From NCBI RefSeq assembly GCF_026571515.1, contig NW_026866638.1:1-64000 (forward strand): a stretch of 64,000 nucleotides of DNA. The letters run 5' to 3'. The stretch is from Ruditapes philippinarum (taxonomy: Eukaryota). Position numbers and translations under genes: made by a program. Each line of letters starts with the position of its first letter. Positions within the stretch are counted from its first letter, which is position 1. Shown here piece after piece: positions 11,999 through 40,054 of the stretch. The notes below the pieces were generated by a model. It saw only the letters and a list, made by a program, of their open reading frames with translations. It was not told where the DNA came from and ran no database searches.

Positions 11999-13758
11999 AT
12001 GGAGAAGGTTGAGATTGAATATATAAGACTGAATATTGGAGGCACAATATTCAAATGTTACAGGAAAACTTTAAGTACATTTCAAGAATCAAAGCTGCAT
12101 AACCTTGATAAAGACAAAGATGATTTTGATAGTGAACACAATGAATTTTATTTTGACCGAAATCCTTTGTTGTTTGCCTATATTATTGATGCCTGTCGTA
12201 AAGGAGCTATTCATCTACCAAAAGACATTTGCGGGACTACTTTTAAACAGGAACTGGAATTTTGGAATATTCCACTAGACAAAGTTGCTCCTTGTTGTCT
12301 AGAAACTTTATATCGAAGCAAAGATGACATCGACACAATTGAAACGTTGATAACACACGAGGAACAGACGTCTGTAATTGAATTAAAACAAGAGCGAGAG
12401 AAAATAAGTTTTCAAACGAGACTTTGGTTGTTTCTGGATGATCCAAGTTCGTCAAAATTGGCGCAGGTATTATACGTTGCACTGTGTGATTTCTTTATAA
12501 CAGGTTAAACTAGCACTTTATGCCTGTCGTTTTTAACTTACCAATAAAATACAATCTTTTTATTTTTTGTTGTGTGATATACTATAGGTTCAGACAAAAA
12601 ACGCAAACAGCGAGTTTGTATTTTAAAATTTTTAATCAATGTGCTTGTTGTATGCCATGCTGATAATAAATGCGGTGATAATGATCTTTTCATGATACAT
12701 GCACCAATACAATAGATTTTTGTATTGAAACTTAAGTTAGGCGGATGATCGAGTTACAGGTATTTTGTTATTAATGTCGGTTTATAGAGGCATTTATTTT
12801 TCTTTCTCATTTTGCAAGTATTTACTAAACTTTTAACTATTAATTAGCAACAAAAATGTTTATCCCTTGTTTTACATTTTCAGTAGAATAAATAGTGTTA
12901 CTATCTTTTAAACAGGTATGGAATACAGTTATGTCTCTACTTGTTGTTGTATCTACATTCATAGATGTGCTATCAACAGTATCAGCGTTTCAACAAAATT
13001 TCACAGAGGCTGAAATCAGGTCTTTAGAGAAAGTTTCAGGTCTACTAAGTCAGGGTAACAAAACAATGGAGAAGCTTGTAACAATGAAACCAAAAGATTA
13101 TCTCTTCTACATCATTGTTGCATGTCATGTAGTTTTAACGTTAGAGTTTTTGCTGTGTTTCATAGCATGTAAAAATAAAAGGTCTTACATGCTTTGTTTC
13201 ATACGTATGAGCACCTTAGTTGGGTATACTTCATTCTGGATTATGTATGCTCTCTATATTAACCTCGCATACATTGAATCGTGGATCGTTATTACAGTTT
13301 ACTTATTCCTCTCTTATTTACAAATCGCAAAAATCGCAAGATTGTTTTATTTTACCAAACGTATACCAGCATTTGCAATTATGGGGTTAACCTTTAGGTC
13401 GTCTATTCATGAATTTAAGATTCTGGCGTTCTTATTGGGTATTCTAGTTACTATTTTCGGCTACTTCTTCTATGCAGCCGAGGTCTTTTATAATCCTAAA
13501 ATGTCTAGCATACTTGAAGGAATTTATTGGGCTTTGATTACTGTGACGACCGTGGGATACGGTGACTACGTTCCGAAAACTGCTTTCGGTCACGTGATTG
13601 CCTCTGCCTGCGCAGTGGTTGGTATACTGGTTCTTGCACTGCCCGTTGGTATAATAGCTTCCAATTTCTACAAATTCTACAACTATCATGGGTACTCTAA
13701 GAAGCACATAGAAGCTATGAGGGAAAACCATTCCGACAAAAATTTAACACGACTGTAA
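11999..13758 (+). CDS. Shaw/Kv3-like potassium channel, paralogue 1; join(11999..12466,12916..13758), 436 aa
   Basis: Exon 1 is the T1/BTB domain (LNIGG, FYFDRNP, HLPKDIC-X20-CC, LWLFLDDPSSS). Phase-0 GT-AG intron (gcgcag/gtatta ... aaacag/gtatgg). Exon 2 is S1-S6 with YWALITVTTVGYGD and LALPVG. Confidence 0.93.
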
Positions 13759-16700
13759 TCAATAACTTATCCTAGTAGCTAAACTTGTGTTTGATTACTT
13801 TCGTCATAACAGTTTTGCAGAACCATTCCAACGCTACACATATTGATTACGAAATAAAAACGCCATTTTCGGTCCAGTCTGAAAAGATTAATTCAAAATT
13901 TTGCAGCTATATTATTTTTCTTTTTTATTAAAAAACCATGGAAGTAACAACATATAGTTTTTAACTTATGCAGGAACTTGAGAACAAAATCAAGTGTAAA
14001 TAATCCCGAGAAAAATTGATAGTTAAATATAAATTTGTGACACTATACCGTCAGGTGTTAAGTCTGTGCCTCGGGCAGCTATGTTTTTCATCGATTTTGC
14101 CAGTAACGGTTTAGAAGTTGCAATTTAATGAAGATTACTAAATCAACAGATTTTGTGCATTGAGAAATTGTGCATTTTGATAGTACGTTATATAATTGTT
14201 AAATAAAATTTTGTATTGAATTAGTTTCATGTTCCTTTTCAAGTTCAGTGGTTTTCCCAAGGGAAAAAGTACTGTTTCTATTAGGACAATGATATATATT
14301 GATATTGTAAAAGTCTCATCAACAATAGCATCATGGGTGTCTCTAGCGAATTGGATATATATCTGCCTGGAGGCTAATTTTGTTGCCATTTCTCTTGATG
14401 TACTAAATTATTGAAACATACCTACAAATTTCTGCTATATAGTAACGCATTAAGTTGATCTTACCATTAGCAATTTAACCAAATGATAGTTGTCAATCTT
14501 TCGATTATTTTCTCTCATAGCTATGTGCACATTGATTTACATTTGGCATATATATTGATAATGGAAAAAAAAAACAATAATTATTATTGATTGTGAGTTT
14601 AAATTCACAGAAAACGGAAATAATATTAAGCAACAGAGTCGATCAATAACTACAAATAATATCACTTAAACCTGATGAAAATGGAAAACATATTTATATA
14701 TCTTTAGATATTCTTTATAGATCCAGGTAATAAGAAAAGATTTTAAATTGGGTTTGCCCTTTTTTTTCCAAATTTTTATTTTTTATAATTTTTATAATTG
14801 ATTTTTACAAAAAATTGAGTGGCGTGTATTTTTGTCATAAATTCAGAAATAATGAATTTAAAGTATATTGAAAAATAAAATGAAATTTGAATTCCAATTA
14901 TAAATTATAAAAATTTTTAAAGTTTCCAACAAGTTTATAAAAATTTTTATGACGTTTTAATTTTTTTGAAATAATAAAACATTGATTATTTAAAAATAAA
15001 CTTTAACTTAAAATATGAAATATTTTAAAAAACATTGATGATTTTAAATTATTCATTTATGTTCGTATTTTCATTGTAAACATTTTGTTTTCATATTTTC
15101 CGTATTTTCACTGGTGTCTTGGCGGACTACTTTCTTCTAAATTCTGCCAATACACAAAGTTAAAAAGGATTTTTTCAAATTATAATGTTTAAAAAGAGAA
15201 AAGGTATATAATGAACATGAAAGTTTTTTTTCGATTGCTGCGGGATTTATTTTCACCCTTTTGAAAATTATCATATTTCACACTTAGTCTAGTGAATTAT
15301 TTATTTTCATTCCACTCGATGAAAATGAATTTTGTATTTATAGAAAAAACTTGATAATTTGAATAACCTCTATATGTTCTGCTGTGAAATTGATCGGTCT
15401 TTATCACATTATTGATTATCAGTAAGGTTCCATTGAATGTAAAATATGTTATGAAATACATAATTAAAGTATATATCTTCATCCCTTGTCATATGTAAAC
15501 AAATAATGAAACTAATGTAATATATTGTTTTGTTTGCTTTTTGCAATGTAAGGTACCTGTGATTGACCTTTTTTGTTACTGTTGTAGTTTTATTTAATGT
15601 TTCACGTGATGACGTAAATAAAATAGTACATGCAGTATAATCGTGACTTTGTCCTGTTTTGTTCCTTTCTACAGCTACTATGTTCATTTAAATGCTTTAG
15701 TTTAGGACAATTCTAGACATGCAAACTATTTCGCGTGCTATAAAAGATCTTGGGTGTTGAATAATAGTGTACAGTATGTAATTCAGATGCGCATTAATAT
15801 ACATTAAATGACGATTGCAGTAAGCCTATGTATTAATCTGCGCTGCACTGTTAAGTAACAAAAATGCGTAATACACGGAGAAGGCAATGAGAACAGCGAC
15901 TGAAATGTTGTGAAATAAAACACGGTTATGGCCGTTTTTGTTGCTCCGCGCTATTTGTATTTACAATTTATCGTCAATTGACCCGATTTTTATCAATTAA
16001 TTCCTTCGATTAACAGTTGAAAATAAATTTGGAATAAAAAATTCCTTCCGATTTCTATTCATATATTGGTTTACCCTTCGGAGATTCGCAGTATGTCTTA
16101 TTTATGAATTAGAATGGGAACAAATTTTACGACTCCACCGCTGGGACGGCAGTATAAAAGACAAAACAAACAAATAAACTCAAATTCGGTAATTTATTTT
16201 TTACATTTGTATCTTCTACAGAAAATTATTAATTATTTTGAAGTACACAGTGGGTTATTATGTATTTAAATGATGTACATGAATTCGAAAGCCATGAATA
16301 AAATAATGACCTTAACATTGCAAAAGTCCGAAAATCTATTTAAAGAAGTAGGTTATATAATTAATGAAACTGTTATTCGTGTAAAAAACGAACTGGAAAA
16401 TTTTCCAGGAAATGAAATGCAAACATATTCAAACAATAAATTGCACTTAAAAAATAGATAGGCCATTTTTACGAATTGTTATATCATAGTATCACATCCA
16501 ATATTAACATTTGTCCCCTTTTGTTTTTGGTTTTCTTGGTTTCCTTGTATGTCCCTGGCTTTCATTTTTTTGGCCATTTTTAACCCGTCAGAAAAGAACG
16601 AACAGTTTTGTTCAACTTTTTAAAAGTCGTTTTTATGTTTACAGTTTAAACATTAATATAATATTAAAACCTAACTTGTTTTTGAAGTTTTTTGTTACCA

Positions 16701-19166: not shown

Positions 19167-21151
19167 CTATGATTTACCATGTGGACAAATAGTAACCTTG
19201 CCGAAAAGATTAACATGTTTCCGGGCGTACTTTTGATAGTGATAAAATGTGTGAAACGACGACGCAATTATACCTATTGGTAGAGCAAGAGAAACAACTC
19301 CACAAACAGCACATGTTGCTGCGATCACATGACCAAAATCAGAGTTTGGGATATAATGGCCATACCCGACAGTGGTCAACGTAATCAATGCCCAGTACAT
19401 TGCGGTGAACATATTATTGAATTGAGAATTTTGAGTAAATTCGACAACGTACATTACAGTGCCGAAAATACAAACTAACAAACATAGCATAAAGAGTAGA
19501 ACTTTGAATTCGGGAATTGAAGATCGGAATGTCAAGCCCATGATATTGAAAGCTGGGACACACTTTGACAAGTAAAACAGACGTGCTAACATCAATATAA
19601 CCAAGTGTTTGATCACAATATACGATATCATTTTTACAACAGTATCTAGTTTGGATAGATTCAATTCCATTATAAAGGAAATCCAAAATGCCATATAGCC
19701 AATTGCGACAGAAAGGCGCGTGAAACACTTGCTGAATGACTTTTTTTCCGGGCAGACGACAAAAGTTACCAATAACTCGAAAGTGAGTATGAAGTGAATT
19801 ATAAAATCTGTGTAAACAAAAATTGGACTTCGTTTTGCAATCTTGTCGAAAGTTGCGTTGCTCAATTTGAAGACACTAGACATGCTCTTGATTACCTCCA
19901 TTTCTGATTCCGTAAATTCAGCACAAAATTGTTTCAAAGTAGACATTGCCATGGATATAGTTGATAACACTATTAGAAGTGAAACAAATACTCCCCATAC
20001 CTGCAAAAATTAAAAAAAAAAGCATAAAGTATGTGTACAGACAAGTGATTTCAAAAGTTTATTATTTCAGAAATTCACGACTTATTATTTCTAAATTAAC
20101 CAAGCCTTTTTTAAGTGAGCGCTTTATATGTAAGTGATACATAAAATCTTTGCAAGGTAGTGTCTTTGCTTGAAGAAAATGGTAAAATGTACAGACATGT
20201 CATTAATATGGATCATGTAAAAAAAATAAACTTCTAATAGAATAGCATGTATTTTCCACCTAAAATATTTTCTGATTTCTGCTTTTATATAGTGTACATT
20301 AAGATTATTATGTGTAAATTATCTCGGTGTAAGCAAGCTTTTGTCATGTATAAAATTCAAAAAATATGTTAAACCTAGATTTAGGTCCTCTCGTCCGTCC
20401 TAGAATAAAAAAAGGCGTTTACTAAAATGTACACGAAAGGTTTAATGATTTGAATGTAAACATTTTCCATTCTTGTAGAATAAAAATACAGTTGAAGATG
20501 ACTTCCGAATAAAGATCACATTGTAAATAAATGCAACTCTACAACTACCCTTAATCGATCAAACAAAACATTGTTACCTCCAAATAATGACCACTTATCT
20601 ATAAGGGACATGTTTAGTCACTCCTTTGTTCACAGGTTTGACTATACATTATAAGTCAAATAGTAGTAACTTACATAAGCATATTTGGATGAATCTGGTT
20701 CGTCAAGAAAAAGCCATATCCTCTGCTTTAAGTCCACGTCCGGTTTAAGTAGAAGGCATGTATTCGTGTTTTGTTTGATATTTTGAATCAACTTCTGCAT
20801 TGTTGATACGTCTTCCTCTGATTTATGTAAGGCTTCCCAACAACACGGAGCAACAAAACGCGGAGAAATCTTCCAAAATTCAAGCTCTTCTCTGAATGTT
20901 GTTCCACACATATCTTTAGGTAAATGTATCGACCCTTTTCTTGATGCGTTAAGAATATGGTAAAACGTTAATGGGTCTCTGTCGAAGAAATACTCATTTG
21001 TGTCTGCCACATAATGGTCGGCATTTTCGTCAAGATGTGCAAGAACAGAATCTGGAAATGTTTTAAGTGTTCCAGCATAACATTGGAAAATAGTCCCTCC
21101 TACATTCAATTTGATTATTCCTTTAGAATTAAAACTGACAGCCTGCTCCAT
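19167..21151 (-). CDS. Shaw/Kv3-like potassium channel, paralogue 2; complement(join(19167..20000,20675..21151)), 436 aa
   Basis: T1 with HLPKDMC-X20-CCW. Same phase-0 intron (gcttat/gtaagt ... ttgcag/gtatgg). Pore YWALITLTTVGYGH and S6 LALPIG. Confidence 0.93.
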
Positions 21152-22699
21152 GTTACCGTGTTGTGTCAACCTGTGCAAATTGCATGAAAATAAGTTACGT
21201 ATTTATATAGCTATTAGTATTCCACCGAATTAATTTTTTTAATGAAAACTTCACAATGATAGCAACAAATCTTGTTAAATTTATACTTTCTAACAATACG
21301 TAATGAATTGTATGTTCTGAAACTGAAAAGAAGAAATGTTACCTAGACTTGTGATGTGAAACAATCACGTGAAATTATTTTAAATGTCATTACATATTGC
21401 ATTTCTATATGTATCAGATTGTAAATCCCGAGGGCATTGAGACACATTCATTGCATTTGAGTGTTGGTTTTCTTTCCTTCTGTCACTTGAATAATATAAA
21501 TATATATGAGTGTGAAATGAATTTTGCCTGATAAAATAAATTAAATATTCAACGCTTATCAATCAAACCTGAAGTGATATCACAGAAATATCCGGAGGAT
21601 GATTCAATACAAACGTGCTAAAACGTATCATTGTATCCAAGTTTTGTACTTTGAACGAAATCATTCTTTACAGTCAGTGCGCGCGTGCGTTTGCGTGATT
21701 AATCTTGTGTGGTTTTTTGTTTTTTTATGTTGTTGTTGATTTGTTTTCTAAAATGGAAATAAAACATGTAACTTCAGTATATATGTTTATACCACAGACA
21801 TCCTAAACGAGCATATCATTTACGCCGCAAAATGATAATTATAAAAAATAGACACTTACTTTCTATTCCTCGTCAAATGTGATCTTACAGTACTATAACG
21901 AAAAACACAACAGCTTTTATTAGATTGAAGCACTTATTTGTTCTATGTTACGTTTCCTTGTGTAAAAAATGTTAAGGATGAAAAACCAATAACTATTTTC
22001 AAACGTATGACATTATTGGTAACTAAGTTAATTCAAATAAATAAGATTAACGCTTCTGTTTAACTTGCACTCTCAGTTCAACGTAATATTCATGTTCTCT
22101 CTTGATTATATCAATTAATTCAGTTAGTTTTACCAGTCTCGCAGGAAATTTATATTATATCAAAGCATATTTGAAATAAAATAATTGCCTTTTATAAAAG
22201 ACCATTCGTTGCCTTGTGCGTACCAAAAAATGTCCACTTTGTTTAATGAATGTTCATGGTGGTCTAAAGTAATGTTAATATTTTACAGATAAGAATTAGT
22301 AAATCGATTTTTAGGTTCATGTAATATAATCTACTTCAGATAATTAGTTTCGAAATTCCACAATTACCTAGAGAATTTAAGGTGACTCATGACTCAAAGA
22401 TGCGTTTGGCTCAGATCTACTTTATTGTAGTTATCTGACAAAGTAGTTAAAAGAAACAGATCATTCTTAATATATACATATCAAATATTAAGCGATACAA
22501 GTTTTGAAGCTTTAGAAATACACCTCGTTAAGCTTTGTTTTATTGGAAAATTCAGACTGCATTTGTTGTATTTATTCATTGATATTAATCTTTTGGGACT
22601 TCATTGTGTAAGAGTTTGTGTGAATTTTAGTACAGTTAACTAGTCAACGGTTACCCTCCTAAATTCTGTACAGAAGGAATGCAATTGATTTAAACATAC

Positions 22700-22880
22700 A
22701 TGTATTTATTTAAGCTCGATTGCGAAACAAGTTCTTGCAACTTATATTAATCACGTTTGAGTCCGCTTCCTGCCAGTACTGGTGTCATATGAAGAAACAT
22801 GGTCGTGACCCGAGTAGGGCTCGAACATATGATCTCTGGGTTGCGAGGCAGACACCTTAACCACTAGGCCACCGCTCCTC
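22700..22880 (-). mobile_element. tRNA-derived SINE
   Basis: The minus strand has A box TGGCCTAGTGG and B box GTTCGAGCC, then a non-tRNA body (tatgacaccagtactgg..caggaagcggactc). A 3' fragment of the same family lies at about 30695-30758. Confidence 0.75.
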
Positions 22881-23738
22881 TTGTAGGGAAGGACTGCAAT
22901 TGTTGTGTTGATGTAATTCAAGGTAATTCAATTAACGATTTCCATAATAAATATTGAGGAATCAGTGTGTTTGATTCTGGTATGGTAACTCAGTCAACAC
23001 TTGTCATAAATATGGGAGGCTACCATTTAGTACCACTACAGTAACATCCAAATGTAGACATAAGGCATTTGCTATAAATACTGGTGCAAAATATTTTAAG
23101 GGGGATTCAGGTTTTAACTTTCGGCACATAGTAATGGAAATATTTAGTGACTTGTAAACCGTGTGTGAGAAAGAAAAACACAGTAGATTTAAGAATATAT
23201 TGTAAATACGAAATCAGCGTTACAATAACTACACCGACTTAGTTACTATAGCCAAGATTCCCTCTAATAATTATGAGGAGCAAGTGGTTTGAAGCCGGCA
23301 ACTTAATCAACTCTGCCACGTACGTAGACCACCCACAATGTAATTTGTATGAACTCCCCTCAAGTGCAAGTTATTTGAAACGGATGTCCACTGCGATATA
23401 ATATGTTGCCCCTGTGAAGTCTATTCGGTTCAGATTTGTACATCTTCAATTTCATTTAAGTTACAATGAAATATTTTAGCTTTTAACATAGTCTTTACAG
23501 GCATGCACATGAACAGGCATGTTTCCCCTTTATTTAAACACATGCTTAATCCAAAAATACTTTTTTTTATAATTATTTCTAATTGTAATGATTTACAATA
23601 AAACAATTGTTTGTTACTATACAATTAACAACAACGCAACATGTAATGTATTTGCAAGACACGTAAAGGTAAAATATTGTATTTATAAGCTTTTTCTGTT
23701 AGTCTAAAATTCAAAAATACGACATAGGTGCCCTCTTG

Positions 23739-25863
23739 TTAAATAGTTTTCATTGGTTTCAAACCTACTTCTTCAAGCAGACTGTTGGATTCCGATGGAA
23801 CAGTTTTGAATTCCTTTAATTGTGCAGGCAATAGTTCTTTATATCGTGAATGCATCTTTATGTACTTATAAAAGTTATAGTACTTGTAAAATTTCGATAC
23901 GATTATTCCAACAGGCAAGGCGATAACAAGCACTCCACACACTGCGCATGCTCCAGCAACCACATGACCAACAACTGTACTTGGAACATAATTACCATAG
24001 CCAACCGTCGTCAATGTAATCAACGCCCAGTAGATGGCAGTAAATATGTTGTCTATATTAGAATCATGCAACAGTTCAGCGGCAAATAGAGTATAGCCAA
24101 ACACGCAAACGAGAATTCCAAGGAGGAAAACTAAAATTGTCAGCTCTTGTTTAGACGAAGCAAATGTTAAACATATTAGTCGGAAAGCAGGTACTCTTTT
24201 TGTGAGATAGAATAGTCGAGCAATTTTGAAAATGGATAGGTAGCCAAACATCAGCTGTATCATTAACACATTGACAGATCCAATATATTTTACATTAAAA
24301 TAAATTGTAAAAGAAATCCAATAAGACATATATCCAAAGCAGCTCACAAGTCGCATAAAGCAAACAAATGCCCTTTTGTTTCGGCAGACGACAAAGCTCA
24401 GCACAAGTTCGACTGTCAAGATAGTATGGAATATTGCATTTGTGTATAAAAGAAATGTAAGTGGTTTAATAGATGCTAGTTTCTCTATTGTTGAGTTTTT
24501 GAAGTTCAATGCGTCTGCAAACTTTGTCAGAAGTTTCATCTGTTTCTCCGAGAAATTTTCTTGAAACATTTTCACTGTTGACAGGCAATCTGCAAACAAG
24601 GCTGCCAGTATGATAACAGATATGAATATACTCCAAACCTGAAATAATTGATGTTTACTGTAGAACAAACGTCAATAAAAACGTTATGTATATAGAGGAT
24701 ATTGAATGAGTGTAGTTTAATACTAAATTTATTGAACGAGTTGAATAAAATTATATTATGCGAGCCTCTGGCGAGCATAATATTGTTGTATTCAACGAGT
24801 TCAATAAATTTAGTATTGAATCTACACGAATATAATATTCTACTTATCACATATATTAGATAAGGACAATAAAATGTTAAAATGAGTAATTTTTCAATGA
24901 CGCGCTTATACAGTAGTGTAACGCTAACATGCTATGTTTCTATATAGCGCAAATGACGTCACGCCAAAGTGTTATTACACTAGTGTAATATCGTTTTTAT
25001 TAAATGGCTTTATTACACTCCTGCGCCGCGGTTTATGTGATAAAATTGTTTATTTTGGATGCTGACTAGCAAAAAAAACAAGAATAAAAATCAACAAAGC
25101 AAAGGCAACGTTCACAGGACGCGGCCCCCGACACACCCAAGCATGGCACGCAGAAGGCACCAAACAAAAACCCGGAGCGGACACAAGGGTGAAGCCCGTT
25201 TCAATTAATTCATTCTTATTTATGTATGGAAATCTTTTGAAACATTTAAATATCGTGATACTGGTATTCTTTACAAAACCAAAAGCAGGTTACTTATTTT
25301 GATGAATTAACTGTTAGTATAAATCAATAATTTTGGTTGACAAAGTGTAACATTTGAAGCATGTTTTCACACCAGATCGTGCATTTCCTTACCAAAGCAG
25401 ATCTAGAAGATTTCGGCTCTTCTAAAAACAACCACACTTTTGTTCTGAAGTCTCTTTTGTCTTGAGCTCTCAAGGTTGAGATTGGTGATTGCTTAAAACG
25501 TTTATTTAGTAAGTCCACTGTTTCAATGACATCTTCACTTCCATAAAGCGCCTCCCAGCAACACGGAGCAACATGGTGCGGAGGAATTTCCCAAAAATCC
25601 AGTTCTTCTTTGAAAGAAGTTCCGCAAATATCCTTTGGCAAATGAACAGCCTTTTTCCGGAATGAATCGACAATGAAAGAGAATAAGATTGGATTTCTGT
25701 CAAAAAAGTATTCGTTTTCTTCAGAATCAAATGAATCCTGTTCTTTGTCAAGATTTGCAAGTTTTGATTCCGGAAATGTTGAAAGCGTTCTCTCATAGCA
25801 CTTAAATGTATTACCCCCAATATTAAATCGAACGATTTTCTTATTATTTATAAATTGTTCCAT
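23739..25863 (-). CDS. Shaw/Kv3-like potassium channel, paralogue 3; complement(join(23739..24638,25393..25863)), 456 aa
   Basis: T1 with HLPKDIC-X20-CCW. Phase-0 intron (gctttg/gtaagg ... tttcag/gtttgg). Pore YWALITLTTVGYGN and S6 IALPVG. Confidence 0.93.
24690..25044 (+). mobile_element. Hairpin-forming non-autonomous element in the intron of Kv paralogue 3
   Basis: Palindrome of about 150 bp (aatactaaatttattgaac ... gttcaataaatttagtatt) followed by a second inverted pair ttatcacata / tatgtgataa. Confidence 0.7.
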
Positions 25864-26192
25864 TTTGTTCCAAATACCGTTCTTCTACAATATATGGTTT
25901 AGCAACTGAAACAGGCAAATATATAATGTTTTGTCTTATTATGTTCATAGTTCACACTTAATTCCCCAAAGAATATAGCTTTATTATGACTATATTCTGT
26001 GACAGTTGCTCTTATGCATCATGAATGATAAGAGCATACATAATTCAAACGATTTCAATATTTATTTCTGCTGGGAAATACAACAGAAGTGATTCCAAGT
26101 AAAATATATTATTTATATAACTGTAAACAATTTCAGCCACCTCGACAGATAATCAATATCCGTCTGGTATTTTTTTAAATATTGTCATAAAA

Positions 26193-27285: not shown

Positions 27286-27439
27286 ACTCACGTTTTCGTA
27301 CTCAATTGTTTCATCTTATACAATAATCAATTAAAATAGTAAACTGTTATTGATCATGTGCTTATTGAACCAATAATGTTTAAATGCAAGTAAAGTGGAC
27401 TTGTCAATATGTGTAGGAAGTGACTTCAAACATACGATT

Positions 27440-28589: not shown

Positions 28590-29540
28590 TCCTGGAGTTC
28601 TTGTGATAACTTTGAAGACGTCCTTAAGTTCTTATGGTAAATGATAACTTTTGTTACTGCCAGTGTGTTTCTTGCGCTAAATCACAAAAGTTTTCCGACA
28701 AACTTTGTGACAGTTATCACAAGAACTCCTGACAAGTTATCATAAGAACTCCATCCTTCATGTAACAGTTCTTCCCCCGTGTTCTGGGTTATATTTATTG
28801 TGACGGCAGAGAAAGGGATATTGATAGAAATATCATATTCAGATGCCAGTTCAGTGGTTTCATTTTTCTGGGATTTATATTGTAATAACAGGGAACGTGT
28901 ATTATTTTGGCCTATGATACAAAAGAGAAAGAACATCAAAATCAGAACAAATCAGATAGCCTCGTGTATTGATGCTTTTTTTATTACGCGGATTTCACGG
29001 GGAAGAACTATTACACGAAGGATTGAGTTCTTATGATAACTTGTCAAGAAGTTCTTGTGATTAACTGTCACAAAGTTCGTCGGAAAATATTTGTATATAC
29101 TAAAACAACACTCGTCAAAAATGATAATTTCATCTTTAAAAGTGAGTTTTATATGCTAAATTAAACTTTAATGATTAAACTTGCCTATATGCAAATGTTT
29201 TCCGACGAACTCCATGACAGTTATCACAAGAACTCCTTGACCAGGTATCATAAGAACTCCTCCTCGTGTAACACTTCCTCCCCCATCGATATTTGCTTTA
29301 GTATAATTAAGTAATAGAAAGAGCACCGAAACACGAGGCTGTTAATCAGATTGCCGAGTGTTTCGGTGTTCTTTCTCTTTTGTATCATATTCAAACATAA
29401 AAGCACGTTCCCTGTTGTCACAATATGAAACCCCGGCAAAAATGAACCAATGATCGAACATCTGAATATGATATTTCTGTCGATTTCCCTTTCTCTGCCG
29501 TCACAATATGTAAACCCCAGCAAAAATGAACCAATCAATG
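28590..29540. mobile_element. Cluster of one MITE family: a full copy at 28683-29095 with TIRs of about 95 bp, an inverted truncated copy at 29190-29540, and a fragment at about 28590
   Basis: gacaagttatcataagaactc (28731) is inverted as gagttcttatgataacttgtc (29025) and recurs at about 29220-29260. The internal word aacagggaacgtg is inverted as cacgttccctgtt at about 29404. Confidence 0.75.
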
Positions 29541-32053: not shown

Positions 32054-33546
32054 ATGGAAAAGTTGTGCAATATGGACAGAACAAATAACCTGCGAATCAA
32101 TGTAGGTGGAACTATTTTCGTTTGTCATTCACATATTTTTAAATCGTTTCCCGAATCGTTTCTTGCAAATCTTGAAAAACAGGAGCCAAACTATAAAAAT
32201 GATGAATACTTTTTTGACAGAAATCCACATATATTTGCGTACATTCTCGATGGTTTTAGAAAAGGTTCAATACATCTGCCAAAAGATGTCTGTGGAACTA
32301 CTTTTAAAGCGGAGATGGAATACTGGGAAGTGTCAAAAGAACACGTAGCTCCGTGTTGTTGGGAAGCGTTATACAAAAGTGACGAGGATATTTTGACCAT
32401 GCAGAAACTCATCAATGATTGTGAGAAAAACTCCAGCTTCCTAATGATGCAGCAAAAAGATCAAAGCATAAGAAACAGATTATGGTTGTTTCTTGATGAG
32501 CCGAGATCCTCGAAATATGCTATGGTAAATATTGCGACATAAGAATATTCTGTTGAAAAACATCATAAGTCATACACTTTTCTAAAGCATATCAATGCAG
32601 TTGCTATCAGCTTTTAATTATTTTGTATTTCTTAACATAGATTTTTTTTTTAGATTAAATATTTTAATTATTTATTTCCCTGTAAGGAGGTAACAAAGAT
32701 ATTTAATTTCAAAACATTTTATTTCAGGCATGGGCTGCGTTTGTGTCTGTGTTGATTGTTGTGTCAACATTAACAGAAGCGATGACGTCAGTGCCAATAT
32801 TCCATGTAAATTATACCGAGTCTGAACAGAAAATTATTAAAAAGGCAAGTGAATTCTTGAACTGGGATGAATCTTCGTATGAAAAAATGATGACTATGAA
32901 ACCACAACCATATCTGAAACTAGCAGATATTGTTTGTCATAGCATTATAACTCTGGAATTCATTATAACCCTTGTTGTGTGTCACAATAAAATGACTTAT
33001 GTGTTTGATTTCTCACGCATATGTTTAATAATTGGATATTTTTCATTTTGGTTGAAATTAATACTTCAGCTTGAAGAAATAAGTTTGAAATCAGACATAG
33101 CTATAAAAATGATAACAGTGTTTGCTTATTTGACAGTTCTTAAGTTGGCGCGTTTGTTTTATCTAGCAAAGCATATTCCAGCATTTTATGTCATAAGGTT
33201 GACAATGTCCTCCTCAAAGACAGAACTGAAAATCCTTATGGCCATACTTGCTATTTTAATATGTGTTTTTGGGACCTTGATCTATTATGCAGAATATCCA
33301 AATTCAAAAATATCAAACGTATTCATTGGTATGTACTGGGCTTTGATCACTGTTACCACAGTTGGATATGGTGATTACACTCCTCAATCAGTCGCAGGTC
33401 ACGTGATTGCCGGAGCATGCGCATCATGTGGCGTATTGATTCTTGCTTTGCCTATTGGAGTAATTGCTTCGTCTTTCTATACGTTTTATAATTGCAACAA
33501 ATATGGCACGAAACACTACGACCACATTAAAGTTCGTCATAATTGA
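32054..33546 (+). CDS. Shaw/Kv3-like potassium channel, paralogue 4; join(32054..32524,32728..33546), 429 aa
   Basis: T1 with HLPKDVC-X20-CCW. Phase-0 intron (gctatg/gtaaat ... tttcag/gcatgg). Pore YWALITVTTVGYGD and S6 LALPIG. Confidence 0.93.
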
Positions 33547-35392
33547 AAAGCCAAGTTTATTTCACAGTTATTAAAATTTTTTACGTATATTATAGAATTA
33601 TTAAAACTAAATCTCCCTTAAAGACATAGAGCTAAAAGCTCTCATTTACTTCATCAAAGTGTATATTTTTGTATAAGTGTTCATAATTGGTTTTAAGTTT
33701 AAGTGTACGAGTATATTTGAGTGTCATCATCCAATAGAATAAGCGTTATCTACTACACGTAGTAAACGTTTTCAATCATTTTTTCTTTACAATATTATGA
33801 TATCAAAAACATCGTAATGTTAAAAAAATATCAACAAAATTTCTTATGATTATTTGATAAGTTTCCTATGATATATTTGATAAGAGCGACAGTCCTATAT
33901 ACTTTATATAGAAGCAAATACGTAGATGCAAGCGGAGTAGAGTTTGTTCTGATCAGTATGAACGATTAAACTTTTGTTGGATGATTTTTATAATGATGAA
34001 AGTTCCTTAAAAATAACACTATAACTTTTAACTCAGTTCTTTTAATTCTATTATTATATAGACATTGTGTTGATGTATTAATGTATATTTGTAATAGAAA
34101 TAAAAAAAAGTGTTGATATAAAACATATTGTTCTTTTGTGATTATTTCTTTATCTTAGATGTTCAACTAAAGTGTGTGTTGACTTCTCTGTGTTATAAAT
34201 GGTCATTGCATGACTTTCAGGACAAAGATAAAAGTTATTCCCAGGTAATAATAAATTTATTCTTCCTTTCATTTATTTGTTGCTAAATCATTATCTGTTT
34301 TTCTCATCAAAAGAATGAGTCATATAAAAAAAAATACAAATACGCGACCTATTGGCTGTACTTTTGACTAAAACTACAGTACACAATATCCAGGCTAATA
34401 TTCAAAATCAATTGGAAATTGTTCTAAGTCATTGGATAATTAACTATTACGGCCAAATTTTCGATTCGTAATCATTTTCAACCACACTCTCGTCACTTTC
34501 GTCATTAATATAGGTTTAAAATTGATTCGTTTAGAGACTTGCAATAATTATGTTGAAACGTTTCAAAATGTTAAGATGATATTTCAGATTAAACTACACT
34601 TATTCACAAGTCATTCAAAATAATAAGTCGTATGAATTTGGACATAACTTTGAACGTGCTAAACAAACTGACCAACATTTAGATGTTTCAGATCATAGCA
34701 ATACTGATATACAATAAATAAAAGAATCGTATAGTCATACAAATCATTTTTTCAATCTGAAATTAGGTTTTACTTATTTTATATTATAAAATGTTGACAT
34801 TTTCGTCACATTATTAATACTCTCGATCAAACGCGTGTCTGAAGGAATATTTTTGCCAAGTTCATTTTTTCACTTTGTTTCCAGATTTTTATACTGCACA
34901 ACAGCAGGTGTCAAGTGCTGTGTGGCAGCTGTAAAAAGTTGCCCCATACTTCACTTCAGTGTTGTTATGTTTTTCTGGTCCTTCTGGATCATTGATGCCA
35001 GCACTATTAAGTGTTCGGAATTGAGTACCGCTTAAGCCGGTGCTAGGGGGCGTGAGGGATGTTGCACTTATTCATTATCCCTTATGTACAGACTCAATCA
35101 AACCGAGTCTGCAATTTTCATGTTATTTTGTTGTAAATAATGCTTTCGAGGGATCACTTTGTTTCCAGATTTTAAAAGATAATAGAAAATGATAGTCTAG
35201 GAAGGTTTGCAAAATTATTTGTCACATGTTCACATCCTTTCAAGAAGGAAAACCACTGCAATGAGTTTGTTGATTGTATTCGATCGTTCATCAGATAATT
35301 GTTATAGAACACTTGATTCAACGTCATTGAGAATTTTTCTTACCAGATATATTTAACTTTAAAGGTCAATTTTAGTAATTGTCAGTCTCAAT

Positions 35393-35478
35393 AAAAAATG
35401 TGCAGTCTGACCGGGACTCGAACCCGGGACACCCGGAATACCGTACCGCGGCTCTACCGACTGAGCTTTACGGCCGCT
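35393..35478 (-). pseudogene. tRNA-like sequence (tRNA pseudogene or tRNA-derived repeat head)
   Basis: The minus strand has D-arm GCTCAGTCGGTAGAGC, T-arm CCGGGTTCGAGTCCCGG and a following T-run, but the acceptor and anticodon stems pair poorly. Confidence 0.6.
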
Positions 35479-35950
35479 TAAACATATTCCCCCGTAAACA
35501 GTGAACAGTTTTCAAGAAAGATTTATTACTAGATCTATTATTATTATTATTATTATTATTACCATTCAAGTTTTGTAGTTTCTTCTGAGATGATTTGGAT
35601 AGTCCTGTACTTCTGGCTTCGAAAGCTTTAATGTTTTTGTATTCTTGATAATAAATAAATCATGTGCATTAATGGATAAAGACTATATTTCATTGATAGT
35701 TTGCCTACTTCTAGGCAATACAGCAGTAAACACTCTTTTCAACCCCAACAGTTAGAAACATCGCGATATCTCGCGAACCACAGATAAAATTAAACATGTA
35801 TACTTTTGGGTTAATTGAAAATAGAAATAAAACAAAATAAAGTAAATTTACTTTTTATAATATGTAAAGAAATAATTTATTTTTAGATAAATACTGGATA
35901 GAAATCACATAATTTATTTCTCATATGCCAATTAGTGTGCCAATTTACCA

Positions 35951-36473
35951 CATATTAAAGGTCATCTCGGGACTACGGTATTAACCATATTGTCAGGGTG
36001 GCGGCGGAGTGCTAAACTATCAGACATATTAGAGGTCATCTCGGGACTACGGTTTTAACCATATTGTCAGGATGGCGGCGGAGTGCTAAACTATCAGACA
36101 TGTTAGAGGTCATCTCGGGACTACGGTATTAACCATATTGTCAGGATGGCGGCGGAGTGCTAAACTATCAGACATGTTAAAGGTCATCTCGGGACCACGG
36201 TATTAACCATATTGTCAGGATGGCGGCGGAGTGCTAAACTATCAGACATGTTAGAGGTCATCTCGGGACTACGGTTTTAACCATATTGTCAGGATGGCGG
36301 CGGAGTGCTAAACTATCAGACATGTTAGAGGTCATCTCGGGACTACGGTATTAACCATATTGTCAGGATGGCGGCGGAGTGCTAAACTATCAGACATGTT
36401 AAAGGTCATCTCGGGACCACGGTATTAACCATATTGTCAGGATGGCGGCGGAGTGCTAAACTATCAGACATGT
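35951..36473. repeat. 74-bp tandem repeat, 7 copies
   Basis: ggtcatctcggga recurs at 35960, 36034, 36108, 36182, 36256, 36330 and 36404. Copies are nearly identical and have no spacers. Confidence 0.97.
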
Positions 36474-38295
36474 CTGTATGTTTATGCTCAAATTTAGGAT
36501 TTTATTGCTGCTGTTTTTTTTATTAAAGTAAAGTTTAAATATCGTGTTTAATATCGTATCAGATAGTAGCACTTTATTTATGCAAAATCCAATACGAGCG
36601 TGTCAGCACCGTTTTTATTATGTAAATAAGACTAATTGTGTTAGATTCCTAGCACAATTATTAGTTAGCTTTACCTATTCCATTGACGTAAGCGTATACG
36701 CCCTATCACAGTATAAAACGAGTACTGATATGGACGTCATGGGTGTTTTCCCCTTTATGTTTAATGCAAACATCTGCGCAGATCTACACAGTCATTCGTC
36801 AAAGTATTCCTTCATACGGCCCTTCTCAACGTATGTAGTGCACACCATTCTTTTGCAGTCATCTGTGCTTGTGTAAAACACCACTTGTTCATCTCAACTA
36901 CAGACATAAAGCCAGCTTATTATCAGAATGTATCTAAAAAATATATATCTGTCATATAATTCTCTTTGTGAATAATGTACTAACATTTTCCAAATTGAAG
37001 CCTACGTTGATCATATATGAAAGGATCGCGTTCCAGGTCATCTATTGTATTAAATATTATTCTCCCCTGACACAATTTGGAATGTTATTAACGTAAAGCA
37101 CTCATTGTTTCTCTTCTGTAAAGTTTAACAATTAAATCATATTGAAGAGAGCCCTTATCATAGCAAATTCCACATAATCAATTAAATCAATATTTGTTTA
37201 GGGAAACTACTGAATAACGGGATTCAATAATATCTAGTCATTACTTAGAATGACAATGAAATCAACCAGGAGAGATTTTTCAGCATTGTATTAAACAGAG
37301 ATACATATGATCTAGTTTCTCTTTGTACAAACATTATCAGATCAAATATGAAAATAACGTTGTTAATTGGTATGTCATTATTTTGTTGATGACAAAGCAG
37401 AAAAGACTTAAAGTTATGATAATAATCATTTTATTATGATGAGAGTGAAGCTGTAATAACAAATGGTTTAATCATATTCTATTTGTCATATACAAAAACA
37501 CATTTTATATGACATTTTCAATACAAAAATGGATTAGATTGGAAGCAACTAAATTCTTATTGAAGTCTTTTCCCGAAGTAAGTTATATTGTGTTATTGCA
37601 AGACGCCTTGGATAAGGCGATAGATTTTATCATTTGTTGACGAAGAAAGTCATCTTAGTAACTATTATTACCGGCAGTCTAATTAACTGAAGCACTTTCA
37701 CGGTTCTTTTGGTGTGTCTCTTATAAACTCGGTATTTTGAGGCGTAGTGTAGGTCCAGTTTTAATGACAATGGGAAAATACAATATTAAAGTGGCAATCT
37801 TTAATCAGAACAGTGAAAACAATACCACAAAGATAGTAAAAACGTTTATTATAAAAATGTGAAATATAAAAAGGCATAAACTATTCGCCTAATAAAAAGT
37901 ATCGAAGAAATTGTTGAATAAAAAAGAATGTAAAGAAAACAAATACATTGCACATTCAAAAGTCATTTCCATATCCCATTATTTTATTAATTTTCTTGAA
38001 ACAGTGTCGAACAGATATCATATTTCAAGAATGGCAGGTACTAAAGTTAATCAACTAAGTCAACTTTCTACTTTATTTTTGTTTTTCTTGAGGGCTGGAA
38101 AATGTTACGAAAAAGACATGTGTTACTGCGTCATGTATTTCAAGTGATTTCTCCCATAATTTTTTACTTAAGATAGCATAATACAACCGAAGTCACTGTC
38201 ATAAGCACTATACATATACGTTTTTTCAACAATCACAGAATAAATGTTATTAATAATAAACAGGTGCAAGGTAAACTTTAAAAAATTAATATGTA

Positions 38296-40054
38296 TTATA
38301 AATCATTTAATTCAAGAATGCTGTTTTCATCTAAACTTATCTTTGATGCTTGGTCCCCATTAACTGATTGCGGCATGTTAACCTCCGTAATAGAGTTTGT
38401 CTTGATGTATGAGCAATAGTTGTAATATTTGTAAAATTTCGATGCAATAATTCCGACAGGTAGAGCAATAACTATCACACCACATACTGCGCATGATCCA
38501 GCAATCACATGACCGACAGTGGTAACAGGCACATAATTACCATATCCAACAGTCGTTAGAGTTATTAACGCCCAATAGATTGCTTTAAAAATATTGTTTA
38601 TATTAGGATTGTGCAGGAATTCGGCAGCGAATAAGAAATATCCATAAACAAAAACACATATACTTAGCAAAAAAACTAATATTTTCATTTCTTGCTTACA
38701 TGATCGGAATGTTAGAGTAATAAGTCTAAATGCAGGGATACTTCTAGAAAGATAAAAAAGTCGAAAAAGCTTCAATATAGAGAGATAGCCAAATATAACT
38801 TGTATAGTTACAACATATATGGAAGTAACATATCGTAAATTTAAGTAGATGCAGCATGAAATCCAATAAGCTACATATCCAAAACAAGCAATAACTCGGG
38901 AAATGCATTTGAAATAACTGTTTTTATTCGGGCAGACGACAAATCCGATAACAAGCTCTAATGTTAGAATGGCATGTAACATTACACTGATAAACAACAG
39001 GTATGCGTTTGGTTTCATGGCCGAAATCTTTTCCATTGTTGCATTACTGAAATGAACGGAATCAGCAAATTTCGCAAACACCATCATATCCTCTTCAGTG
39101 TGGTTTTCTTGAAATATATCGATAGTGGATAGAGAATCAGCAAGCAAAGCAGCCAGAATAAGGAATGATATGAATAAGTTCCATACCTGAAAACAATGTA
39201 ATATGTATTAAATTCACCTATAAGCATAACAAGTTCATCAATTCACTTCTTTGATTAAAAAAGAAACAAGGCAGTCGGGGTTCTGCATGAATATGTTAAT
39301 ATTAATCCTATAACGAATCTTACAAATAACAAATATGAAAGAAATTTCATGTTGGAAAATAACATACATTCATATCGCCACTGACTTTATAATAATAATA
39401 ATAATCTAACATGTAAACAGTATACTAGCATGTTCTTATTTACATATGTATATTACAACACACCGAATTTACAAATTGTGACATCCGTAGATATATTATA
39501 TATATAATTAAGTTAAAGACAAAGTATACCATAAAAGGAAAACAATCAATGTTACAAAAATAATCAATAAATTTTATTCTTACAAAAGCTGATCTGGAAG
39601 ATTTCGGCTCATCCAGAAAAAGCCAAAGTCGTGTCCTAAGACCCGATTTTCGGTCGTGAATACGGCTCCAATTTTGACCTTGACGAAAATTTTCCAGCAG
39701 CAAGTGCACTATTTCTATATCACCTTCGCTACCATAAAGTGCCTCCCAGCAACACGGAGCAACATAGCGCGGAGGTATTTCCCAGAATTCTAACTCCTGT
39801 CTGAAAGTTGTTCCACATATATCCTTTGGCAAATGTATTGCTCCTTTTCGGAACGAATCCAGGATGTATGCAAACAGTATTGGATTTCTATCGAAAAAAT
39901 ATTCATTTTTTTCGTCGTCATATTCGTCGTTTTCTTTGTCTAAGTTAGCCAACTTCGAAGTAGAGAAAGCAGTAAGCGTTTTTGTATAGCACTTGTAAGT
40001 TGTTCCACCGATATTTATCAGAGTGAATTTGTTTTTAATTGTATGTTTATCCAT
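38296..40054 (-). CDS. Shaw/Kv3-like potassium channel, paralogue 5; complement(join(38296..39186,39584..40054)), 453 aa
   Basis: T1 with HLPKDIC-X20-CCW. Phase-0 intron (gctttt/gtaaga ... tttcag/gtatgg). Pore YWALITLTTVGYGN and S6 IALPVG. Confidence 0.93.

What the first reader, a model, noticed from the sequence alone, without database searches (positions are those of the whole stretch)
11999..40054. Five-gene cluster of intact Shaw-like K+ channels sharing a dismantled voltage sensor
Seen: five complete ORFs with one conserved phase-0 intron, the T1 HX5CX20CC motif and TVGYG. S4 reads YLQIAKIARLFYFTKR, HLVILMLARLFYLSKC, YLSIFKIARLFYLTKR, YLTVLKLARLFYLAKH and YLSILKLFRLFYLSRS. S3 reads RMSTLVGYTSFW, RLSVAIGYMAFW, RLVSCFGYMSYW, RICLIIGYFSFW and RVIACFGYVAYW. 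S2 ends VLTLE, ILTFE, ILTVE, IITLE and ILTLE. Established: Shaker-family channels have RLFK/RIFK (K5, Shaker K374), S3 NxxD (D316) and S2 WFTxE (F290, E293), which form the gating-charge transfer centre; invertebrate Shaw channels already have few S4 charges. Here K5 is Tyr, the S3 Asp is gone, the S3 Asn is Arg and F290 is Leu/Ile in all five. Inference: partner residues were lost together and the new residues are fixed across divergent paralogues. That suggests a repurposed subfamily (voltage-independent, chemically gated or regulatory) rather than decay. I cannot check whether this family has already been described.
Basis: partly seen in the sequence, partly recalled or inferred. Interest (0 to 1): 0.88.

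Follow-up and report, generated by a model that had tools for sequence, protein, structure and literature searches.

The report
Clam Shaw-like channels with remodelled sensor
Five intact, transcribed Manila-clam genes belong to a conserved bivalve branch of Shaw (Kv3) potassium-channel subunits in which the inner charge network of the voltage sensor and the second proline of the gate have been replaced, so they probably act as regulatory or only weakly voltage-sensitive subunits, which nobody has yet tested.

Summary
Observation confirmed. The window is Ruditapes philippinarum; two of the genes equal RefSeq proteins named 'Shaw-like'. It holds five intact two-exon genes (429-456 aa). Each has a T1 domain (BTB_2, HX5CX20CC) and S1-S6 with TVGYG, split by one phase-0 GT-AG intron that the clam's canonical Shaw and Shab genes share. 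Spliced contigs from three studies show g2 and g3 transcribed as modelled.

Alignment to Kv1.2/Kv1.3 confirms K5->Tyr, D316->neutral, N313->Arg and F290->Leu/Ile. It adds R297->small residue and an S6 gate changed from PVPVIV to P(V/I)G(I/V)I(A/V). R3, R4, R6 and E293 persist.

The set is fixed, with few exceptions, in 39 sequences. The named ones come from Veneridae, Mactridae, Myidae and Dreissenidae. The clade (100/99) lies inside Shaw. Its nearest relatives keep Glu316 and Arg at K5, so the network was taken apart in steps. Synonymous sites are saturated while dN is 0.27-0.61, so decay is rejected.

Function is untested. I favour regulatory (silent-type) Shaw subunits, because loss of the second gate proline is their hallmark. 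The main rival is homomeric, weakly voltage-dependent channels, since KCNQ1 gates with PAG. I found no paper on this clade. Verdict: new variant of a known kind, moderate interest.

The parts
11999..12466 (+). g1 exon 1: start codon, T1 domain with HX5CX20CC, T1-S1 linker
   Evidence: Identical to the N-terminus of RefSeq P0009.
12916..13758 (+). g1 exon 2: S1-S6 and stop. S2 VLTLE 13132-13146, S3 13204-13239, S4 13318-13362 (RLFY 13339-13350), TVGYGD 13549-13566, gate PVGIIA 13642-13659
20675..21151 (-). g2 exon 1 (T1). The transcribed exon runs on to about 21167, where two alternative leader introns begin (joints 21168->21341 and 21167->21566).
   Evidence: The protein equals RefSeq P0027.
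19167..20000 (-). g2 exon 2: S1-S6. S4 19560-19604 (Met at R3), filter TVGYGH 19356-19373, gate PIGIIA 19263-19280
   Evidence: The spliced joint 20000/20675 is seen in contigs of runs X1, X4 and X5.
25393..25863 (-). g3 exon 1 (T1). Best solved relative is the Aplysia Shaw T1, 3KVT.
23739..24638 (-). g3 exon 2: S1-S6. S4 24195-24239, TVGYGN 23991-24008, gate PVGIIV 23898-23915. The 3' UTR reaches at least 23202.
   Evidence: The spliced joint 24638/25393 is seen in X1 and X5, and a 1220-nt contig covers 23202-24422. AF2 model pLDDT 88.9.
32054..32524 (+). g4 exon 1 (T1)
32728..33546 (+). g4 exon 2: S1-S6. S2 IITLE 32944-32958, S4 33130-33174, TVGYGD 33358-33375, gate PIGVIA 33451-33468
39584..40054 (-). 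g5 exon 1 (T1)
38296..39186 (-). g5 exon 2: S1-S6. S4 38740-38784, TVGYGN 38536-38553, gate PVGIIA 38443-38460

Best explanation
The five genes are functional, transcribed members of a bivalve-specific branch of the Shaw (Kv3) subfamily of Shaker-type K+ channel subunits. That part is shown. Each keeps what is needed to fold, tetramerise and line a K+-selective pore: a Shaw-type T1 with the zinc site, six helices, TVGYG and the first gate proline.

Two modules were rebuilt and then frozen by selection. In the voltage sensor the inner network (F290, R297, D316, K5) became Leu/Ile, a small residue, a neutral residue and Tyr. An Arg appeared on S3 at N313. Basic residues at R3 (most members), R4 and R6, and the acid at E293, stayed. 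In S6 the gating hinge PVPVIV became PxGxI(A/V).

The mechanism is inferred. I think they most likely work as regulatory ('silent'-type) subunits. They would enter tetramers with other Shaw-type subunits of the clam through the shared T1. There they would contribute a sensor with little or no charge-transfer capacity and a non-standard hinge, and so tune the voltage range, slope and kinetics of the heteromer. They would not make a classical delayed rectifier on their own.
For: Identity. BTB_2 plus Ion_trans on every gene. The T1 is closest to the Aplysia Shaw T1 3KVT (E 2.9e-24) and to Kv3.1 (2.7e-20), against Kv2.1 at 2.9e-16, Kv4.3 at 1.1e-15 and Kv1 at 4e-9. The careful ML tree puts the family (100/99) inside a clade with the clam's canonical Shaw (99/97) and outside Shab and Shaker.

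Real genes. Exact spliced joints for g2 in three studies and for g3 in two. There are nine intact copies, each with exon 1 within about 1.3 kb of exon 2, plus separate pseudogene remnants that carry stops. Named relatives occur in Mercenaria, Mactra, Mya and Dreissena. pS is 0.63-0.86 (saturated) while dN is 0.27-0.61. The substituted residues are fixed across 39 sequences. The AF2 model is confident, with the sensor blocks at pLDDT 90-97, and matches only Kv1-Kv4 structures.

Regulatory reading. The second gate proline is Gly in 37 of 39 family and 17 of 18 sister sequences, and V6 is mostly Ala. Pisupati et al. 2018 (PMC6279357) found atypical S6 gate sequences in 42 of 43 regulatory subunits from eight independent origins. 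The 27 homotetramer-forming channels share the PVPVIV consensus. Labro and Snyders 2012 (PMC3440756) state that all silent KvS subunits lack the second proline. Silent subunits are documented inside Kv3 itself: vampire-bat Kv3.5 and a Nematostella cluster (10.1101/2025.09.21.677649; PMC6279357). The residue after GYG varies (Asn, His or Arg in 10 of 39 sequences). Such variation is easier to tolerate if few such subunits sit in a tetramer; that last step is inference.
Against: No functional datum exists. The PxG hinge is not drifting. It is almost invariant across family and sister groups. That looks like a selected alternative hinge rather than the relaxed gate that Pisupati's two-step model predicts. 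KCNQ1 forms working homotetramers with a PAG hinge (PMC3440756). The T1 zinc site and core are intact, and nothing in them signals self-incompatibility. No sequence rule for self-incompatibility is known (PMC6279357). Many other clam Kv genes also have non-consensus gates, so in molluscs the rule from mouse and sea anemone may not carry over. Co-expression with a conducting partner was not examined.
Confidence: 0.45

Rival explanations
1. The subunits form homotetrameric K+ channels with very shallow, strongly shifted or absent voltage dependence (a leak-like or otherwise-gated conductance). The sensor would be held in one position by Tyr at K5, the new S3 Arg and E293. The PxG hinge would work as PAG does in KCNQ1.
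For: The whole pore, the T1 zinc site and the PxG hinge are under strong conservation. KCNQ1 gates with PAG (PMC3440756). The new sensor residues (Arg at N313, Gly-Tyr in S3, Tyr at K5) are fixed, not variable, which suggests a new stable packing. From my own knowledge, the parent type, invertebrate Shaw, is already weakly voltage dependent. The clam's canonical Shaw has only R3, R4, K5 and R6.
Against: Loss of the second gate proline marks nearly all known silent subunits (PMC6279357; PMC3440756). Asn, His or Arg after GYG in several paralogues would sit four times around the filter in a homotetramer. There are no currents to look at.
Confidence: 0.33
2. They are ordinary voltage-gated Shaw-type delayed rectifiers. 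R3, R4 and R6 with E293 would be enough for sensing, and the substitutions would only shift the midpoint and kinetics.
For: R4 is invariant, R3 is basic in 30 of 39 sequences and R6 in 38 of 39, and E293 is acidic in all 39. The sensor is predicted to fold normally. From my own knowledge of Shaker mutagenesis, paired neutralisation of K374 with D316 or E293 is tolerated, and Leu at F290 shifts gating but does not abolish it.
Against: Four conserved partners of the inner network are gone at once, and the hinge is changed too. No characterised Kv1-Kv4 channel that I know of carries this combination. Searches for such a description found none.
Confidence: 0.17
3. They are decaying or neutrally drifting duplicates (young pseudogenes) whose sensors are falling apart.
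For: The genome does hold broken copies of the family on contig C10829, with stops in both exon types. The youngest tandem pair on C1718 has dN/dS of 0.70, but from very few changes.
Against: All five reading frames are open and the splice sites are canonical. g2 and g3 are spliced in transcript assemblies. Each paralogue has closer relatives outside the window than inside it. The same replacement residues are fixed in 39 sequences from at least four families of bivalves. dN is far below saturated dS.
Confidence: 0.02

Closest known systems
Invertebrate Shaw / vertebrate Kv3 (KCNC) subunits, e.g. the Aplysia Shaw T1 (PDB 3KVT), human Kv3.1 (7PHH) and the clam's own canonical Shaw on contig C486
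   Same: T1 with HX5CX20CC and the highest T1 similarity. Six-helix architecture and TVGYG. The same phase-0 intron between the T1-S1 linker and S1. Placement inside the Shaw clade. No basic residue at R2, and R1 basic in only some members, as in canonical Shaw, which has neither.
   Different: F290, R297, N313, D316 and K5 are all replaced. W289 is Ile. The gate is PxGxI(A/V), not PVPVIV. Exon 2 is only about 30% identical to the canonical clam Shaw.
Regulatory ('silent') Shaker-family subunits: vertebrate KvS (Kv5, Kv6, Kv8, Kv9), vertebrate Kv3.5 and the Nematostella regulatory clusters
   Same: Loss of the second proline of the S6 PXP hinge and a change at V6. They are lineage-specific expansions that branch within a conducting subfamily (PMC6279357, PMC3440756, 10.1101/2025.09.21.677649).
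   Different: It is not known whether the clam proteins fail to form homotetramers. Their gate is Gly, not the hydroxyl residue typical of mouse Kv6, Kv8 and Kv9 (PMC6279357), and it is highly conserved rather than degenerate. Kv6.4 keeps its charge-transfer Phe (F273; PMC12206438), whereas the clam family has replaced this Phe. The origin is independent (bivalves).
KCNQ (Kv7) channels
   Same: An S6 hinge of the form P-x-G (PAG in KCNQ1) that supports gating in homotetramers (PMC3440756).
   Different: There is no close homology. KCNQ lacks T1. The KCNQ chains match only the S4-to-S6 part of exon 2, and much more weakly (E about 1e-16 against 1e-28 for Kv1).
Shaw-like proteins of the gastropod Batillaria attramentaria (KAG5694307.1, KAK7479944.1)
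   Same: Tyr at the K5 position of S4, and a gate without the second proline (PxA).
   Different: They keep F290, R297 and D316. They fall in a different subclade, so Tyr at K5 arose independently there.

Membership tests
Shaker-type (Kv1-Kv4) K+ channel alpha subunits | N-terminal T1 (BTB_2) tetramerisation domain followed by a six-helix Ion_trans domain | tested here: met
   Pfam BTB_2 E 1e-21 to 5e-24 and Ion_trans E 1e-19 to 2e-22 on all five genes. The AF2 model matches only Kv1-Kv4 chains.
Shaker-type (Kv1-Kv4) K+ channel alpha subunits | K+ selectivity filter TVGYG | tested here: met
   TVGYG in all five and in 39 of 39 family sequences. The next residue is D, N or H in the window genes.
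Shaw (Kv3) subfamily | Zn-binding T1 motif HX5CX20CC (non-Shaker T1) with closest similarity to Shaw T1 | tested here: met
   The motif is in all nine intact copies. For the g3 T1: 3KVT E 2.9e-24, Kv3.1 2.7e-20, Kv2.1 2.9e-16, Kv4.3 1.1e-15, Kv1 4e-9.
Shaw (Kv3) subfamily | Phylogenetic placement with canonical Shaw, apart from Shab, Shal and Shaker | tested here: met
   Clade with the clam's canonical Shaw at 99/97, with Shab and Shaker outside (quick trees). Caveat: no Shal row could be included.
Shaw (Kv3) subfamily | Canonical gating-charge transfer centre: F290, E293, D316 with K5, plus R297 | tested here: not met
   L/I, E, neutral residue, Y and small residue in all five genes. Numbering is from the alignment to Kv1.2/Kv1.3.
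Shaw (Kv3) subfamily | S6 activation gate consensus PVPVIV | tested here: not met
   P(V/I)G(I/V)I(A/V). Gly at P3 in 37 of 39 sequences.
Regulatory ('silent') Kv subunits | Atypical S6 gate, usually loss of the second hinge proline | tested here: met
   set against the rule in PMC6279357 (42 of 43 regulatory subunits) and PMC3440756.
Regulatory ('silent') Kv subunits | No functional homotetramers (self-incompatibility) | not testable with these tools
   This needs expression. No sequence rule for T1 self-incompatibility exists (PMC6279357).
Regulatory ('silent') Kv subunits | Functional heteromers with a conducting subunit of the same subfamily | not testable with these tools
   Candidate partners exist in the genome: the canonical Shaw on C486 and other Shaw-type genes. 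Co-assembly was not tested.

The most novel reading that the evidence does not exclude
A conserved, bivalve-specific Kv3-derived subfamily has converted its S1-S4 domain from a voltage sensor into a static or differently tuned module. This came about by stepwise, compensated replacement of the K5-D316-R297-F290 network with Tyr, a neutral residue, a small residue and Leu, plus a new Arg on S3. The result would be either voltage-independent K+ channels or a new, independently evolved class of obligate regulatory Shaw subunits. It would also be a natural experiment that replays the classical Shaker second-site-suppressor pairs.
Probability: 0.3. Interest if true: 0.7.

Novelty: new variant of a known kind. 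Interest (0 to 1): 0.52.

Why it matters
The gating-charge transfer centre (F290, E293, D316 with K5) is one of the most conserved features of voltage sensors. Here a whole, long-lived gene family has lived without three of its four parts under purifying selection, and living relatives preserve intermediate states. That gives three things.

First, it is a natural test of which parts of the network are needed for folding and which for sensing.

Second, it is a candidate for a further independent origin of regulatory Kv subunits, this time in a protostome Kv3 lineage. It would extend the pattern seen in vertebrates, cnidarians, ctenophores and choanoflagellates.

Third, it is a concrete target for understanding the very large Kv repertoire of bivalves. 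The search of this clam genome gave at least 62 matches to exon 2.

If the subunits turn out to be ordinary weak rectifiers, the finding reduces to a divergent paralogue group that RefSeq already labels 'Shaw-like'.

Tried and rejected
Pseudogene or decay reading: rejected on open frames, splicing in transcript assemblies, relatives in other genera and fixed replacement residues.

'All partners lost in one step': rejected in part. Relatives P0115 and P0118 and the RLxR group show intermediate states.

'Tyr at K5 is unique to this family': rejected. The gastropod Batillaria has it with an otherwise canonical centre. In the same clam other Shaw-type genes have His or Val at K5 with the S3 acid kept. 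One Mya family member has Asp at K5.

Per-domain dN/dS. It was computed, but dS is saturated between all old paralogues (pS 0.63-0.86), so only upper bounds can be given (about 0.12-0.37 where dS could be estimated). dN in the sensor is about twice dN in the pore domain. The only young pair (C1718a/b, dS 0.036) has too few changes to be informative.

The organism of the sister (RLxR) group could not be named. Its proteins come only from unnamed ENA assemblies.

Raw RNA reads of run X21, of which about 4% were read, gave only 0-2 reads per bin on the exons. That is uninformative.

A Shal reference for the tree was sought with PF11879 and in 12 further own-genome Kv loci, without success.

Literature searches for a description of this clade found none.

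Complex prediction was not used. Its controls replace a chain by unrelated proteins, so they cannot tell subfamily-specific T1 compatibility from generic T1 tetramerisation. A pass would not have moved my odds.

The joined (spliced) coding sequences were never sent to a search tool. 
Full report
WHAT IS THERE.

Between 11999 and 40054 the window holds five two-exon genes in the order + - - + -. Exon 1 (156-159 codons) begins with ATG and encodes a T1 domain. Exon 2 (272-299 codons) encodes S1-S6 and ends in a stop. All five introns (203-754 nt) are GT..AG and phase 0, and they lie at the same place, between the 'SSxxA-x' end of the T1-S1 linker and the '(V/A)W' start of S1.

Pfam finds BTB_2 on each exon 1 and Ion_trans plus Ion_trans_2 on each exon 2. 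The zinc motif HX5CX20CC is intact in all five. The S1-S2 loop carries N-glycosylation sequons in all five.

The joined coding sequences were not sent to any search tool. Every search was made exon by exon, by reference.

ORGANISM AND ANNOTATION.

Two proteins returned by the homology search are the window's own products. P0027 equals g2 residue for residue. P0009 equals g1, except that the public model reads through the donor site and adds 21 intron-derived residues. Both are named 'potassium voltage-gated channel protein Shaw-like [Ruditapes philippinarum]'. The genes are therefore already in RefSeq under an automatic name.

EXPRESSION.

I laid four runs on 19880-25870. Contigs of X1, X4 and X5, which come from three studies, skip exactly 20001-20674, the g2 intron. 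Contigs of X1 and X5 skip exactly 24639-25392, the g3 intron. Both skipped stretches have GT..AG on the minus strand. A 1220-nt contig covers g3 exon 2 and about 540 nt of 3' UTR. g2 has one or two further leader introns upstream of the start codon.

The tool only guesses that these runs are RNA. The intron-less contigs are what argue for transcripts. Raw reads of X21 were too sparsely sampled to add anything. g1, g4 and g5 were not examined.

THE RESIDUES.

HMMER alignments of g1 exon 2 to the Kv1.2-2.1 chimera and to Kv1.3 fix the numbering. A MAFFT alignment also includes the clam's own Shaker, Shab and canonical Shaw. Counts below are for 39 family sequences.

In S2:
- E283 is Asp, Asn or other residues.
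- W289 is Ile in 34.
- F290 is Leu in 34 and Ile in 5.
- E293 is Glu in 34 and Asp in 5.
- R297 is Ser, Gly, Ala, Thr, Cys or another non-basic residue in all 39.

In S3:
- N313 is Arg in 36.
- D316 is Val, Ala, Thr, Leu, Ile, Ser, Phe or Gln in all 39.

In S4:
- R2 is never basic.
- R1 is basic in 18 of 39.
- R3 is Lys or Arg in 30.
- R4 is Arg in 39.
- K5 is Tyr in 33, Phe in 5 and Leu in 1.
- R6 is Lys or Arg in 38.

The clam's canonical Shaw has E, S, R, R, K, R at R1 to R6. The family therefore has lost one S4 charge relative to its parent type (g2 has also lost R3). The striking loss is the inner network K5-D316-R297-F290.

R297 is lost. The S6 gate PVPVIV reads P(V/I)G(I/V)I(A/V), with Gly at P3 in 37 of 39 and Ala at V6 in 28 of 39.

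The residue after GYG is Asp in g1 and g4, Asn in g3 and g5 and His in g2. Arg occurs in the Mya/Dreissena subgroup.

Family-specific invariant residues include the S3 Arg, a Gly-Tyr pair and a Trp in S3, and a His after the filter. The new residues are fixed, not noisy.

An AlphaFold2 model of g3 exon 2 is confident (mean pLDDT 88.9; sensor blocks 90-97). Foldseek matches only Kv1, Kv2, Kv3 and Kv4 chains.

FAMILY SIZE AND AGE.

The genome (1.41 Gb) holds nine intact exon-2 copies. Five are in the window. The others are one on C6752, one on C10829 and a tandem pair on C1718. Each has its T1 exon within about 1.3 kb. Stop-bearing remnants lie on C10829.

After these copies the scores drop from E 1e-58 to 1e-26. 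The best hit outside the family is the canonical Shaw.

Named relatives come from Mercenaria mercenaria, Mactra antiquata, Mya arenaria and Dreissena polymorpha. No named oyster, mussel or scallop protein appeared, although the word-index search has limited reach.

In the trees each window gene has closer relatives outside the window than inside it. g3 groups with Mercenaria P0001 and g4 with Mercenaria P0018. g2 sits near a Mactra group in the first quick tree and beside the clam's own C10829 copy in the careful tree. g1 and g5 group with the unnamed P0012 and P0004. For g3 and g4, and probably for all five, the paralogues predate the split of these genera.

SELECTION.

Between paralogues the proportion of synonymous differences is 0.63-0.86, which is saturated. 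dN is 0.27-0.61. Where dS can be estimated, dN/dS is 0.12-0.37.

dN in S1-S4 (0.31-0.84) is about twice that in the S4-S5 linker to S6 (0.14-0.36). The sensor evolves faster than the pore but is still constrained.

The young C1718 pair (dS 0.036, dN/dS 0.70) rests on too few changes to interpret.

PLACEMENT AND ORDER OF EVENTS.

The g3 T1 is most similar to the Aplysia Shaw T1 (3KVT, E 2.9e-24) and to Kv3.1 (2.7e-20). Kv2.1, Kv4.3 and Kv1 follow at 2.9e-16, 1.1e-15 and 4e-9.

In a careful ML tree of 59 S1-S6 sequences:
- the family is one clade (100/99);
- it joins two groups from unnamed assemblies in a 'PxG' clade (100/100);
- this clade sits among further mollusc Shaw-like groups with PxA gates;
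- all of these lie inside a clade with the canonical Shaw (99/97), with Shab and Shaker outside.

No Shal sequence could be included.

The relatives show intermediate states. The RLxR group has Ile at F290, keeps R297, and has His at N313, Glu at D316, Gln at R3 and Arg at K5. P0115 and P0118 are sister to the family with moderate support (92/79). They have Leu at F290, have lost R297, and keep His313, Glu316 and Arg at K5.

The likely sequence is as follows. First came the gate change and conservative swaps in the centre. Then R297 was lost. On the family stem came Arg at 313, loss of the acid at 316 and Tyr at K5. The last three map to one branch, so their mutual order is unknown.

Tyr at K5 also arose in the gastropod Batillaria with F290, R297 and D316 intact. 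Other clam Shaw-type genes have His or Val at K5 with the S3 acid kept. Loss of K5 therefore does not by itself force loss of D316.

The shared intron is ancestral. The clam's canonical Shaw and Shab genes are split at the same place, whereas its Shaker genes are not split there.

HOW IT MOST LIKELY WORKS.

Shown: these are constrained, transcribed Shaw-derived subunits with an intact T1, filter and first hinge proline.

Inferred: they act as regulatory subunits in heteromers. The main argument is the gate. Pisupati et al. 2018 (PMC6279357) found atypical S6 gates in 42 of 43 regulatory subunits from eight independent origins. The 27 homotetramer-forming channels share the PVPVIV consensus. 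Labro and Snyders 2012 (PMC3440756) note that all silent KvS subunits lack the second proline. Silent subunits exist within Kv3 (bat Kv3.5 in 10.1101/2025.09.21.677649; a Nematostella Kv3 cluster). The same preprint records separate Kv3 duplications in lophotrochozoans, without characterising them.

Against this reading, the PxG hinge is strongly conserved rather than degenerate. KCNQ1 gates as a homotetramer with PAG. Nothing in T1 points to self-incompatibility.

The main rival is a homomeric channel with weak, shifted or no voltage dependence. A third possibility is near-normal gating through R3, R4 and R6 with E293.

From my own knowledge of Shaker mutagenesis (Papazian and colleagues), K374, E293 and D316 form a structural network in which paired neutralisations rescue folding.

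My idea that the new S3 Arg and the S4 Tyr now pack against E293 is a hypothesis only.

NOVELTY.

The genes are annotated automatically, and lophotrochozoan Kv3 duplications are on record. I found no description of this clade or of its motif set.

It is a new variant of a known kind: a Shaw-derived, bivalve-restricted subfamily that has replaced the charge-transfer network and the hinge.

Interest is moderate. It is testable with standard electrophysiology and bears on how sensors and regulatory subunits evolve. No functional claim can be made yet.

LIMITS.

Expression was checked for g2 and g3 only. Pairwise dN/dS is limited by saturation. The trees lack Shal and rest on one alignment.

Noticed in passing
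window 12467-12915 (g1 intron): The public RefSeq model of g1 (P0009, 457 aa) reads through the conserved donor at 12466 and adds 21 residues of intron-derived sequence. The other four genes, and the spliced contigs for g2 and g3, support the 436-aa model with the donor at 12466 and the acceptor at 12916.
   Followed up: partly
window 19356-19373 (g2 filter) and 19560-19604 (g2 S4): g2 has TVGYGH and Met at R3. By my alignment its S4 still has Lys at R1 and Arg at R4, so two basic residues between R1 and K5, not one. Asn follows GYG in g3 and g5. Arg follows it in the Mya/Dreissena subgroup.
   Followed up: partly
window 21167-22332 (- strand, upstream of the g2 start): Transcript contigs show two alternative leader introns (joints 21168->21341 and 21167->21566). 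In run X4, contiguous coverage reaches about 22332. This suggests a long or alternatively spliced 5' UTR for g2.
   Followed up: no
window 22680-22879 and 24680-25279: Two short stretches have depths hundreds to thousands of times higher than the flanks in all four runs, with many loose ends. One lies between g2 and g3 and one lies inside the g3 intron. They are probably fragments of an abundant, transcribed repeat.
   Followed up: no
window 47320-48045 and 50894-51142 (- strand): An ORF at 50894-51142 carries an ABC-transporter signature ([12 protein letters not shown]), and the ORF at 47320-48045 ends in a stretch that looks like the start of an ABCG membrane domain. An ABCG ('white'-like) gene therefore lies downstream of the channel cluster. 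A minisatellite of about 700 nt abuts that second exon.
   Followed up: no
G000 C10829:155926-157090, C10829:69053-69328, C10829:99610-99930: These are broken copies of the same family, with stop codons in T1 and pore exons. They show gene birth and death alongside the nine intact copies.
   Followed up: partly
loci L016, L018, L023, L026, L028 (G000 C6070, C10241) and L025 (C14844): Other expanded Shaw-type groups of the same clam also lack Lys at K5 (His in RIFHLVKH, Val in RIFVLMKH). They keep F290, the basic residue at R297 (Arg, or Lys in L025) and the S3 acid. Their gates are also non-consensus (TIPVIS, SVPVIV). The genome search gave at least 62 matches to exon 2.
   Followed up: partly
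P0117, P0123, P0125 (Batillaria attramentaria); P0112 (Mya arenaria): The gastropod Shaw-like proteins have Tyr at K5 with an otherwise canonical charge-transfer centre. Their public models fuse two or more tandem genes. One Mya family member has Asp at K5.
   Followed up: partly
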